Shown here: piece after piece, positions 40,601-44,549 of the stretch
Position numbering within the stretch: the first letter of the stretch is position 1
Layout of the letters: every line of letters begins with the position of its first letter
Assembly (NCBI GenBank): GCA_047495785.1
Contig: JBLDXI010000003.1
Coordinates: 4,278,001 to 4,342,000, forward strand
Direction of reading: 5' to 3'
DNA from: Lepidodermella squamata
Lineage: Eukaryota > Animalia > Gastrotricha
Length of the DNA: 64,000 bases
Translations under genes and position numbers: made by a program
The notes under the pieces: model-generated
What the model saw: the letters and a program-made list of their open reading frames with translations, nothing else
Told to the model about the DNA's origin: nothing
The model's database searches: none

Positions 40601-43600
40601 TATTATAACACAACTTCTTGATTGGAATATTCCGATATATTTGGTGTATTTTATCTTATGGTATTTATGGAAAATTAGTAATAATATGTTATTTAAGCGC
40701 GCGCGTATAGGTACTAATGCGTGAACGCGCCACTGATAGTACATTCAGCTGCCGCGGTATTCTTGCTGCCTGCTTGAAACTATTTTTGCCGCTGCTGCTG
40801 TGTGCTTAGTTCATGCTTTTTGATACTCAAGCACTCACGCCGTGAACCTTGTGATATAAAAATTATTAGTATTAACTCGATAGTAGTTGGCTTTTATTAT
40901 GACTTGGTTTGAATAGAATACCATCTCTCCCATCACATCACCGCCACTCCCACCGTCATTTCATGTGTTTCAAATGGCCTCATCCGCGTTGCGCTTTCTC
41001 TTGATATTCCGATATGCAATTTTCAGACTGCGATTCAACTAGAAATAGAGCAGATAAATTGTACCGACGTTACTTTGGCGTTATTTTTACTTCATGGCTC
41101 ATCTTATGTTTTTCGCCGATGGTTGCCTAGCTCGTAGGATTCACCCTCTTTGATAGTTTTGTTCTCCCTGAAAGGCCCCCCGTACTGGCACAATTTCTAT
41201 TCAGTCGCGCGCAACTTGTCGTGAATACACATTCTCGTTTAAAATCAGCTAGACCTTTCGTTTTTTCGAGAGCTCTTCACAAATTTGTTGGGCTCAGTAC
41301 TTTATGGCGCCTGGTTTTTTTTCGTGAAACGATGAGCACTCTTCTCGAGCGCTTCAAGTCATTTTGCCAATACCCTTAAGCTATTTATATATATATATAT
41401 ATATATTTATGGAACAAGTGTTACTTACTGTTATTATTGTTGAATGTCCACTTTGCAATCGAAGTGACACGAACCGTGAAAGTTACTCGCTGTAACAATG
41501 GGTGACCAGCCTGATTCGAAAAGCTCCCCATCGGTTGCCGAGCCGGATATTCCCGAACGTAAGAGCGTAGTTTTTCCATTGGTTTTGCTAAAGTTATGAA
41601 GAGTTTGTGGAGACGATGACCGATCTGAGGCCAAGGCTCTTGATAAAACTATCAAAACTAACATTTGAAATCATCAGAGATCTTCTGCTCCTATGTCTCA
41701 TAAGGGATTGAAGTTTTTATTGTTCTCACGGCGGGCTGTAATTTATTATGTATTATTTTATGTGACAGCTCGTTGGAGCTGAGAAATCAGACTGGCGTAT
41801 CTGCTGGTCTGGCTTCTCGCCTTTTTCGCAGACAGATAACGCGACCGCTGCTGCCTGATGCGTTTTCCTGTATTAAGAGTTTGCGCGCGTGCCGCGATTG
41901 CGCTATCGCCGCGCTACAGAATTATCGTCACTGTGCTCATCACCGCTATTTTCCTGCCGCGGCTGCCTTTCTCTCTCATGTGATTGTGTATGAAGCTCAT
42001 TCGATCAGAGACAAGAAGACGATTCCTCCCGGGTCGCTTCTCACAAAAACACGCACGATCGCAGGCTCTCTCATTAGAAACCACGCGTAGCTGTTCCATT
42101 ATTATTATTTTTTATTATTATTACCACCATTGCGTCGTCTCATTCCTTATTGTACTGCAATTATTTCATACACTTTTGGTAGCTCCATTGTGCCGCAATA
42201 TTAGATGTGCCCATTCTTCGGATTCCTATTTTGCATCGCGCCGACTTCGCGTGTAGCTTTGCCAGTCAATAGATGTTTCTCCAGTGCGATGCCAGTCGCG
42301 AATAAGTGAAGTCGAATTTTTTCGTTACGGTGCGATTAAGTTGCGACCGCGACCTTGAAGCATCATGGCAGCCGCTACTATGATGATGGAAAAGGGGCGA
42401 TCAGGTATATCGATGCGTATATTGCGAAGAGTTGTTGTTATCTCTATTAATGCCGATGCGGCATATTTGCAATTTATTGGTATTTTAATCGCTCATAATT
42501 TCGCTTTTTCAGTTCGGATTTTCCTGGAACAAGCGAAGAAAGACTTCGAAGACAAATGGAACAGCCCACCCAAGGTATTAATTTATTGTACAATTTTTAC
42601 ATATAATGGCTTAAATTGTCGTTCGCGCAGAATACCGCTACGTTGGACGACTTCGATCGCGTGAAAACTCTTGGCACGGGATCTTTTGGCCGTGTCATGC
42701 TCGTGCAGCACAAACAAAACAAAAACTACTATGCCATGAAAATCCTCGACAAGCAAAAGGTTCGCAGTTTTTCTGACTGATTTCATTGACTTGTATTATT
42801 TATGGGATTGATTTTAGGTCGTTAAACTTAAGCAAGTCGAACACACACTAAACGAGAAGCGCATTCTGTGTTCGATCAAATTCCCGTTCTTGGTCAACCT
42901 TGAGTACAGCTTTAAGGACAATAGCAATCTCTACATGGTTCTCGAATACGTTTCTGGTGGTGAAATGTTCTCTCACCTCCGCCGCATCGGTCGATTCAGG
43001 TGAGCGCGTTCGATAATTAAATTTGTACATGTTTACCATAGCGAGTGAAAGTCGGAACATGATAATATTCTCTAGTATGTTTGACTAATCTCGGTTTGAA
43101 GCCATGATTTTGTTGATGTGGTGATCATAGACGCGAGTCGTTGATTCTATTTGATTAATAATGTTTTTCTAAATAATGCAGTGAGAGCCACAGTCGCTTC
43201 TACGCTGCACAGATCGTTCTAGCTTTTGAATACGTAAGTTTTGACCTTTCTAAGCATTGATCACGTGATGTCTTATGTCTCTCAACAGCTTCATTACTTG
43301 GAAATTGTTTATCGGGATCTTAAACCTGAAAACATTCTGATCGACGCCTCGGGTTACTTGAAGGTAGGGTTCATTTTCACCGTACCATCAGCTCAATTGA
43401 TGCGTTTGACGCGGACTTGAGAGACTTCACCGAATGAAGATTTAGTGGCCCCTCTAACTACCGATTGTATCGGTTCGTAGTTGCCTGGCGTTTCGCTTCT
43501 GTGGATTGGACTTGCTTACATTTGTTGATTGATCATAACTGTGTTACTAGTGAACAGCAAGCACAGTTTTACGCTGCGCAGATCGATCTAGCACTTGAAT

Positions 43601-44549
43601 ATCTGCACGAGAACGACGTTCTTTATCGAGACATGTCTGTTTAGAATCGTTCTGGGTGTACTTTAATCATTGATTGATTGAACATATCCCACAGGAAGCC
43701 CGAAAATATCTTACTTGATGCCGCTGGCTACGTGAAAGTAATAGTCGCTTGTCACCCGCCTGGGGTGCCCTTATTTTGCGTGATTGCTGCGACCCTATTT
43801 TTAATCGTTTTCACGCAATTTTCGTTATCTGATGTTGGTGCCTGCGCTATTTTGCTGTAGCGTAATTTTATAGCACACAACCGCTCAATTTCATATCGAT
43901 TTCGCGTTCAAACGCATTGGTTGCTGATAGTATTTTTAGCATTTGATAGGAAATAACTGATTCCAACTATTCAACAGGTGACTGACTTCGGTTTCGCCAA
44001 GCGCGTGAAAGGCAGGACTTGGACGCTGTGCGGAACACCCGAATACCTCGCTCCCGAAATCATCCTGAGCAAAGGCTACAACAAGGCCGTCGACTGGTGG
44101 GCACTTGGCGTGCTCATCTACGAAATGTGCGCTGGCTATCCTCCTTTTTTCGCTGACCAGCCCATTCAGATCTACGAGAAAATTGTCAGTGGCAAGGTTA
44201 GCTTATTTATTATTTAGGAATATTTAGGAATTAGCAACTGTTTTAAATTTCGAATTAGGTGCGCTATCCTTCGCATTTCACTGGTGACCTCAAAGAGCTT
44301 CTCAAGAATTTGCTGCAAGTCGACTTGACAAAGCGCTTTGGTAACCTGAAGAATGGCGTCAATGACATTCGAAACAGCAAGTGGTTCGCAAATATGGAAT
44401 GGATTGCGCTTTACCAGCGCAAGCTTGAAGCTCCTTTCATCCCGAAAACTAAGGGACCCGGCGATACGTCCAACTTTGACGAGTACGAAGAGGAGGCGCT
44501 ACGCATTTCATCGACCGAGAAGTGTGCGAAGGAGTTTGCCGACTTCTAA
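37618..44549 (+). CDS. PRKACA: cAMP-dependent protein kinase catalytic subunit (PKA-C / kin-1 orthologue)
   Basis: Exon 37618-37666 [16 protein letters not shown]; core exons 42513-42574, 42631-42759 (GTGSFG), 42818-42999, 43182-43233 plus 43289-43363 (YRDLKPEN), 43978-44196 ([14 protein letters not shown]), 44259-44549 (...[10 protein letters not shown]). Confidence 0.96.
39652..39826 (+). CDS. Putative alternative first coding exon of PKA-C (Ser-rich, non-myristoylated)
   Basis: 58 codons plus 1 nt ending at GTATGT; phase 1 matches the common exon at 42513. Confidence 0.6.
41386..41407. repeat. (TA)n microsatellite
   Basis: About 11 TA units in the first PKA-C intron. Confidence 0.9.
42365..42404 (+). 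CDS. Putative alternative first coding exon of PKA-C ([13 protein letters not shown])
   Basis: ATG in good context (ATCATGG), 13 codons plus 1 nt, CAG|GTATAT donor, phase 1. Confidence 0.6.
43551..43737 (+). CDS. Alternative PKA-C catalytic-loop cassette B (exons 43551-43634 and 43695-43737)
   Basis: Splices to [43 protein letters not shown]; 127 nt with the same entry and exit phases as cassette A. Confidence 0.85.

What the first reader, a model, noticed from the sequence alone, without database searches (positions are those of the whole stretch)
43182..43737. Mutually exclusive exon pairs in PKA-C: two 127-nt catalytic-loop cassettes, each split by a different intron
Seen: cassette A is 43182-43233 (52 nt) plus 43289-43363 (75 nt); cassette B is 43551-43634 (84 nt) plus 43695-43737 (43 nt). 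Both total 127 nt, enter in phase 2, exit in phase 0, and encode the same helix E to catalytic loop segment. The internal introns sit at different codons and phases (0 versus 2), so A1+B2 hybrids, A+B together, or skipping both all shift the frame. Known (from memory, to be verified): vertebrate PRKACA encodes this segment as one 127-nt exon, and Aplysia PKA-C has alternative A1/A2 cassettes here. Inference: an ancestral duplicated exon gained independent introns in each copy, so the switch now has to select whole two-exon units. Standard mutually-exclusive-exon finders would probably miss this.
Basis: partly seen in the sequence, partly recalled or inferred. Interest (0 to 1): 0.85.

Follow-up and report, generated by a model that had tools for sequence, protein, structure and literature searches.

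The report
PKA gene: two split alternative cassettes
The protein kinase A catalytic-subunit gene of this small invertebrate holds two alternative copies of the 127-base piece that encodes the catalytic loop, a switch long known from sea slugs, but here each copy is cut in two by its own newly gained intron; whether the second copy is used in RNA could not be tested.

Summary
Cassette A (52+75 nt) and cassette B (84+43 nt) each total 127 nt, have GT-AG borders and encode residues 139-181 of PKA-C, with all catalytic-loop residues kept. A1+B2, B1+A2, both cassettes, or neither all break the frame.

Two molluscs (three cassettes each), a leech and a tapeworm all have this segment as unsplit 127-nt exons, so the two internal introns are separate, lineage-specific gains.

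The underlying switch is not new. Alternative copies of this exon occur across molluscs, annelids and a bryozoan, and were first reported for Aplysia in 1988.

Differences between A and B fall mostly on third codon positions (12/5/27), so B has been kept as coding sequence.

A computed 23-bp intronic stem brackets B (dG -34.6 kcal/mol; 0 of 90 shuffles reach it).

Use of B in mRNA, and mutual exclusivity, remain unshown. No protein of this species or a close relative is in the databases. B is also very divergent and has an odd Asp at position 151.

The scan noted other alternative-exon switches in this genome, but not this one on other DNA.

Verdict: a new variant of a known kind, of moderate interest.

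The parts
37618..37666 (+). Candidate first coding exon N1 ([16 protein letters not shown], myristoylation-type start), ending in phase 1
   Evidence: ATG-GGN-AAY start, GTAAGA donor, phase fits exon 2. No RNA evidence.
42365..42404 (+). Candidate alternative first coding exon N2 ([13 protein letters not shown]), ending in phase 1
   Evidence: ATG, open frame, GTATAT donor, phase fits exon 2. No RNA evidence.
42513..42574 (+). Exon 2 equivalent, 62 nt
   Evidence: homology ([13 protein letters not shown]) and AG/GT borders.
42631..42759 (+). Exon 3 equivalent, 129 nt (glycine-rich loop, Lys72 region)
42818..42999 (+). Fused exon 4+5 equivalent, 182 nt, ends in phase 2 (..RIGRF + AG)
43182..43233 (+). 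Cassette A, first half (A1, 52 nt): helix E up to Tyr156
   Evidence: good acceptor, GTAAGT donor.
43234..43288 (+). Intron inside cassette A, 55 nt, phase 0; absent from all comparators
43289..43363 (+). Cassette A, second half (A2, 75 nt): [25 protein letters not shown]
43396..43420 (+). 5' arm of the intronic stem that brackets cassette B, 33-57 nt downstream of the A2 donor
   Evidence: dG -34.6 kcal/mol against -23.4 +/- 2.6 for 90 dinucleotide shuffles; pair probabilities 0.56-0.81.
43551..43634 (+). Cassette B, first half (B1, 84 nt): helix E to Asp166 plus two bases of codon 167
   Evidence: TAG acceptor, weak GTCTGT donor.
43635..43694 (+). Intron inside cassette B, 60 nt, phase 2; read-through gives a stop (YRDMSV*)
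43695..43737 (+). Cassette B, second half (B2, 43 nt): (M)[14 protein letters not shown]
43896..43921 (+). 3' arm of the stem that brackets cassette B, 57-82 nt upstream of the next acceptor
43978..44196 (+). Fused exon 7+8 equivalent, 219 nt (DFG, activation loop, APE).
44259..44549 (+). Fused exon 9+10 equivalent with stop codon (ends ..KEFADF*)

Best explanation
This is the single PKA catalytic-subunit gene of a small spiralian; earlier notes of this scan suggest a gastrotrich.

Its exon-6 equivalent encodes helix E, the catalytic loop and strands beta7-8 (residues 139-181). It was duplicated in tandem, as in molluscs, annelids and bryozoans, giving two alternative cassettes. In this lineage each cassette later gained a short intron at a different codon (55 nt in phase 0; 60 nt in phase 2). 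Each alternative is therefore now a two-exon unit.

Shown:
- the anatomy of the two cassettes;
- homology to the known cassette position;
- unsplit cassettes in four outgroups;
- past purifying selection on B;
- a strong computed intronic stem around B.

Inferred:
- The short internal introns are removed early by intron definition, which in effect re-creates 127-nt units.
- A has the better splice sites and a near-consensus sequence, so it is the default.
- The stem 43396-43420 / 43896-43921 loops B out and brings the A2 donor within about 90 nt of the next acceptor, which favours the A form.
- B is chosen when A is skipped and the stem is not formed.
- Every mixed product is out of frame and would be lost to nonsense-mediated decay.

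The two products would be PKA-C isoforms that differ in helix E and the catalytic-loop surroundings.
For: - Anatomy and frame logic.
- Gene identity and residue mapping.
- A-versus-B differences fall 12/5/27 on codon positions 1/2/3 of 42 codons. dN is 0.26 and synonymous sites are saturated. Only 5 second-position changes has P = 0.0024 under a neutral B.
- B keeps exactly 127 nt, has no stops, has four usable splice sites, and retains Tyr164, Arg165, Asp166, Lys168, Glu170 and Asn171.
- B's other substitutions occur in active AGC kinases; its best solved match is Plasmodium PKG.
- The same exon exists as two or three alternative 127-nt cassettes in Mya and Lottia.
- Isoform pairs are annotated in Dreissena and in the scallops Mizuhopecten/Argopecten.
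- The alternative cassette type is present in the Aplysia protein, in Capitella and Owenia, and in Watersipora.
- Stem around B: dG -34.6 kcal/mol, z = -4.3, 0 of 90 dinucleotide shuffles as good. Pair probabilities are 0.56-0.81 when 43000-43973 is folded, and the stem appears in the centroid structure.
Against:
- No protein of this species or a near relative is in the searched collections; the best is 86% identical.
- No B-like peptide was found among short database proteins or in 80 metagenome/metatranscriptome PKA-C contigs.
- B sits on a very long branch (0.92 against 0.10 for A).
- B has Asp where PKA has Val151. As I recall, kinases generally have a hydrophobic residue there.
- The B1 acceptor (..gttactag) and donor (GTCTGT) are weak.
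- The stem has no comparative support. The codon-position test cannot exclude a recent loss of function.
Confidence: 0.6

Rival explanations
1. Cassette B is an unused relic. The exon was duplicated and B served as an alternative for a long time, but it is now a silent pseudo-exon pair that has not yet picked up a disabling mutation. The gene makes only the A form.
For: - B has a long branch and no B-like sequence turns up anywhere.
- It has a radical Val151-to-Asp change, a single GTT-to-GAT step.
- B1 has weak splice sites.
- A strong stem would loop B out permanently.
- No RNA evidence exists.
Against: - The frame is intact, the length is exactly 127 nt, there are no stops, and all catalytic residues and four GT-AG borders survive.
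- Third-position bias of the differences is strong.
- B gained, or at least kept, a precisely placed intron whose removal restores Lys168. An unused sequence has no reason to keep that.
Confidence: 0.22
2. B is a regulatory 'poison' unit. It is included together with A, which shifts the frame and sends the mRNA to nonsense-mediated decay, thereby tuning PKA-C dosage. It would not encode a second isoform.
For: - A+B inclusion gives an immediate stop.
- The 187-nt A2-B1 intron is long enough to be spliced, so double inclusion is physically possible.
Against: - A poison exon needs no open frame and no conserved catalytic motif, yet B shows coding-type constraint.
- Homologous cassettes in molluscs are annotated as coding isoforms.
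Confidence: 0.08
3. The choice between A and B is set only by tissue-specific splicing factors plus frame surveillance. The intronic stem would be a by-product with no role.
For: - No relatives were available to test covariation.
- The second stem, which would bracket A, is weak: pair probabilities are 0.13-0.19.
- That stem's best duplex is only -25.7 kcal/mol, against a null of -21.2 +/- 1.3.
Against: - The B-bracketing stem is far stronger than in shuffled introns and dominates the folding ensemble.
- Its arms sit close to the A2 donor and the next acceptor. As I recall, that is the geometry seen in structure-controlled alternative exons.
Confidence: 0.3

Closest known systems
Aplysia PKA catalytic-subunit alternative internal cassettes (Beushausen et al. 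1988, Neuron 1:853; reference seen in PMC9531652) and the same cluster in other spiralians
   Same: - Same gene, same segment (residues 139-181), same 127-nt length, and same entry and exit phases.
- The copies are tandem.
- Mya and Lottia have three such cassettes each.
- Alternative cassette types occur in gastropods, bivalves, a cephalopod, the annelids Capitella and Owenia, and a bryozoan.
   Different: - In all comparators read here each cassette is one unsplit exon. In this gene each is split by a private intron at a non-homologous codon.
- Cassette B is not the highly conserved 'VLVLEYLHHLDIM' type (27-28 of 43 identical), so its one-to-one orthology is unresolved.
- The residue range and kinetic differences of the Aplysia forms are from my memory, not from a text read here.
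Vertebrate GNAO1 exon pairs 7.1-8.1 / 7.2-8.2 (PMC5896119)
   Same: A two-exon unit is swapped as a whole for a homologous two-exon unit.
   Different: - In GNAO the pair was duplicated as a block, so the internal intron sits at the same position in both units. The units are also the last exons of the gene.
- Here the units are internal. Their introns lie at different codons and phases, which points to gain after duplication of a single exon.
Alternative exons selected by intronic RNA pairing (Dscam1, 14-3-3 zeta type docking and selector sites; PMC6071210, PMC3535345 listed)
   Same: A long-range intron-intron duplex loops out one alternative and brings the other's splice site close to the constitutive exon.
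   Different: - There is only one strong duplex. No shared docking site with competing selectors was shown.
- There is no conservation or experimental evidence.
Alternative exon pairs inside other kinase domains (JNK/MAPK8-10 exon 6a/6b, FYN 7A/7B); from memory
   Same: Tandem alternative exons swap a part of the kinase core to tune the enzyme.
   Different: Those are different kinases and different segments, with single-exon alternatives.

Membership tests
Tandem-duplicated mutually exclusive exons | Adjacent, homologous coding units at the same place in the gene | tested here: met
   A and B lie 187 nt apart and are 28/43 aa and 83/127 nt identical.
Tandem-duplicated mutually exclusive exons | Same length class and same entry and exit phases | tested here: met
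   Both total 127 nt, with phase 2 in and phase 0 out. This holds for the two-exon units, not for the single sub-exons.
Tandem-duplicated mutually exclusive exons | Joint inclusion or joint skipping is non-productive | tested here: met
   A+B, neither cassette, A1+B2 and B1+A2 all give stops.
Tandem-duplicated mutually exclusive exons | Exactly one unit is present in each mature mRNA | not testable with these tools
No transcripts or proteins of the species are in the databases.
Tandem-duplicated mutually exclusive exons | Both units are kept by purifying selection | tested here: inconclusive
   The 12/5/27 codon-position pattern and saturated dS with dN 0.26 show past constraint. Recent decay of B cannot be excluded without a relative.
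Spiralian PKA-C exon-6 cassette cluster (Aplysia type) | The gene is the PKA C-alpha/beta-type catalytic subunit | tested here: met
   The exon 43978-44199 matches PKA C-alpha residues 182-255 at E = 5e-47. Constitutive exons are about 85% identical to animal PKA-C.
Spiralian PKA-C exon-6 cassette cluster (Aplysia type) | The alternatives replace residues 139-181 (127 nt) | tested here: met
   maps B to residues 139-181. Mollusc cassettes have the same borders.
Spiralian PKA-C exon-6 cassette cluster (Aplysia type) | Cassettes are orthologous one-to-one to the mollusc/annelid types | tested here: inconclusive
   The 43-column tree is unresolved. A is nearest the canonical type (88%). B pairs only with an unnamed database cassette (P0255, support 88/80) and is 27-28/43 identical to the conserved alternative type.
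RNA-structure-controlled alternative exons | Stable long-range intronic pairing that flanks an alternative | tested here: met
   Stem 43396-43420 / 43896-43921: z = -4.3, pair probabilities 0.56-0.81. This is computed only.
RNA-structure-controlled alternative exons | Pairing is conserved or covarying in relatives, or shown by mutation | not testable with these tools
   No related locus could be fetched. The best metagenome match is 84% at protein level.

The most novel reading that the evidence does not exclude
After an alternative exon pair arose, each copy separately gained a short intron at a different codon. These introns now act as a lock: only the matched halves restore the frame. Two crossing intronic stems choose between the two-exon units. 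One is strong and brackets B; one is weak and brackets A. That would make intron gain a way of hardening an alternative-splicing switch, in a signalling kinase whose catalytic loop is being swapped.
Probability: 0.15. Interest if true: 0.65.

Novelty: new variant of a known kind. Interest (0 to 1): 0.4.

Why it matters
PKA-C is among the most conserved animal kinases, and its exon structure is reported as nearly frozen across bilaterians (PMC3625193). This locus shows three things:

- The old spiralian habit of swapping the catalytic-loop exon reaches a further lineage.
- Alternative exons can themselves be split by new introns without losing the switch. That gives two-exon alternatives whose halves are not interchangeable.
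- Length-matching exon finders would overlook such cases, so alternative-exon counts in intron-gaining lineages may be too low.

If B is expressed, it offers a natural, strongly diverged helix E and catalytic-loop variant of PKA for enzymology.

Tried and rejected
- **Reads.** The look-up of sequencing runs gave four runs.
- **Proteins of the species.** I ran a representative search with the last exon, two profile searches with window exons aligned to a full-length relative, and a search with the 43-residue B peptide for short fragments. None returned a protein of this species or a close relative; the best overall identity was 86%.
- **Alignment of all exon pieces** to one protein came out misaligned and was not used. 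One search misplaced the B pieces, so I used only the constitutive exons.
- **Metagenome scan** for related loci: 80 PKA-C contigs, best 84%, none with a B-like cassette.
- **Locus look-ups** failed for Mytilus coruscus, Tubulanus and Owenia.
- **The repeat finder** saw no inverted repeat because the stem has G-U pairs and a bulge. Whole-intron duplex folding was uninformative. Windowed duplex scans found the stem.
- **Introner-like copies** of the two new introns: none in the window.
- **Aplysia papers** PMC48508 and PMC362957 are not held.
- **Rejected readings.** An alternative B1/B2 border (88+39 nt) would delete Lys168. Steric blocking between A and B fails because the intron is 187 nt. 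I saw no U12-type consensus in the donor contexts printed.
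Full report
**What is there**

The region 42365-44549 (+ strand) is a compact PKA catalytic-subunit gene.

- The exon at 43978-44199 matches mammalian C-alpha residues 182-255 at E = 5e-47.
- The other exons are read: exon 2 (42513-42574, 62 nt), exon 3 (42631-42759, 129 nt), a fused exon 4+5 (42818-42999, 182 nt), a fused exon 7+8 (43978-44196, 219 nt) and a fused last exon (44259-44549).
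- A is 43182-43233 plus 43289-43363. B is 43551-43634 plus 43695-43737. Each totals 127 nt, and all eight borders are AG or GT.
- Both cassettes enter in phase 2 and leave in phase 0.
- A's intron (55 nt) lies between codons 156 and 157. B's intron (60 nt) lies inside codon 167.
- Both translations are open and keep Tyr164, Arg165, Asp166, Lys168, Glu170 and Asn171.
- All mixed or double products give stops. Only A1 alone or B2 alone would stay in frame.
- No third cassette is present.

**Is B a real coding alternative?**

Direct evidence could not be had. Three protein searches and one representative search found no protein of this species or a close relative (best identity 86%). A metagenome scan found none either.

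The indirect evidence favours a coding role.

- A and B differ at 12, 5 and 27 first, second and third codon positions out of 42 codons. dN is 0.26 and synonymous sites are saturated.
- If B had drifted freely since the duplication, about a third or more of second positions should differ. Five or fewer has P = 0.0024.
- B kept the exact length, the frame, the splice sites and the catalytic residues.
- Most of its substitutions are seen in active AGC kinases. Its best solved match is Plasmodium PKG, just ahead of PKA.

Against this:

- B is on a very long branch.
- It carries Asp at the position of Val151, which as I recall is normally hydrophobic.
- B1 has a weak acceptor and donor.

**Comparison with other animals**

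The switch itself is old and known.

- Gene models from Mytilus, Pinctada and Mya read two cassettes in a row.
- The Mya arenaria locus (L001) and the Lottia locus (L002) each hold three tandem cassettes. Each cassette is a single 127-nt exon with AG and GT borders.
- Helobdella (L003) and the cestode Hydatigera (L084) show one unsplit 127-nt exon.
- Annotated isoform pairs that differ only in this cassette exist in Dreissena and in scallops. Similar pairs exist among unnamed transcript-derived proteins.
- One alternative type (VLVLEYLHHLDIM) is almost invariant in bivalves, gastropods including Aplysia CAA45014, a cephalopod, Capitella, Owenia and the bryozoan Watersipora.
- Beushausen et al. 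1988 reported two Aplysia catalytic subunits made by alternative splicing (reference seen). The details of that paper are from my memory.
- Soberg et al. 2013 state that exon lengths and intron phases of exons 2-10 are identical from chordates to Daphnia. Their exception is a sponge, which has an extra intron in exon 6.

Unsplit 127-nt cassettes are therefore the ancestral state. The two introns here are new, separate gains, in a gene that has otherwise lost three ancestral introns. Neither intron has copies elsewhere in the window.

A 43-column tree cannot say which mollusc cassette, if any, B corresponds to.

**How the choice may work**

- The A2-B1 intron is 187 nt, so steric exclusion does not apply.
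- I saw no U12-type consensus in the donor contexts.
- Frame surveillance covers every wrong combination.
- A windowed duplex scan found a stem of 23 pairs between 43396-43420 and 43896-43921. Its dG is -34.6 kcal/mol against -23.4 +/- 2.6 for 90 dinucleotide shuffles, and none reached it.
- In a fold of 43000-43973 the stem's pairs have probabilities 0.56-0.81, and it appears in the centroid.
- The stem encloses B and would bring the A2 donor and the next acceptor to within about 90 nt of each other, which favours the A form.
- A weaker pairing, 43000-43048 with 43493-43519 (probability 0.13-0.19, present in the minimum-energy fold), would enclose A. It crosses the first stem, so the two cannot both form in a nested structure. 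This second stem is only a lead.
- An earlier first-reader note of this scan (s1-407781) had flagged the B-bracketing duplex. I confirm it computationally. No comparative test was possible.

**Novelty**

- A two-exon alternative unit is known from vertebrate GNAO exons 7-8. There the pair was copied as a block and shares its intron position.
- Here a single-exon alternative pair became two-exon units through unrelated introns, so the halves are not exchangeable.
- WebScipio-type prediction requires candidates of equal length or lengths differing by multiples of three. It would not pair 52 nt with 84 nt, or 75 nt with 43 nt.

I rate this a new variant of a known kind.

- Confidence is 0.6 that B is a used, mutually exclusive coding alternative.
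- Confidence is about 0.85 that the structure arose by duplication followed by two separate intron gains.

Noticed in passing
window 37618-37666 and 42365-42404: There are two candidate alternative first coding exons for PKA-C. One has a myristoylation-type start (MGNQGS..) about 4.8 kb upstream. The other is a short non-myristoylatable one ([13 protein letters not shown]) just before exon 2. Both end in phase 1 and fit exon 2, recalling the alternative N termini of Aplysia and vertebrate PKA-C.
   Followed up: partly
window 42818-42999, 43978-44196, 44259-44549: The ancestral introns 4|5, 7|8 and 9|10 are absent (exons of 182, 219 and 291 nt). Meanwhile two new introns sit inside the alternative cassettes, so the same gene shows both intron loss and intron gain.
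   Followed up: partly
L001 52773-56332 (Mya arenaria); L002 15355-16496 (Lottia gigantea): Molluscs carry three, not two, tandem 127-nt exon-6 cassettes. Public gene models of Mytilus coruscus, Pinctada imbricata and Mya arenaria read two of them in a row, which looks like an annotation error.
   Followed up: partly
window 43000-43048 with 43493-43519: A weak long-range pairing would bracket cassette A, and it includes the donor site at 43000. It crosses the strong stem around B. It is present in the minimum-energy fold but has only 0.13-0.19 probability.
   Followed up: partly
window 43586-43588 (codon 151 of cassette B): B has GAT (Asp) where cassette A has GTT (Val). As I recall, kinases generally have a hydrophobic residue at this helix E position. 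It is a one-base change that could mark a special property, a recent defect or a sequencing error.
   Followed up: no
proteins P0255, P0314, P0319, P0321-P0323: An unnamed group of database PKA-C proteins has a cassette (..[26 protein letters not shown]..) that is the nearest relative of cassette B: 30/43 identical, tree support 88/80. Its 90% cluster also holds cestode fragments, but the organism of these proteins is unknown.
   Followed up: partly
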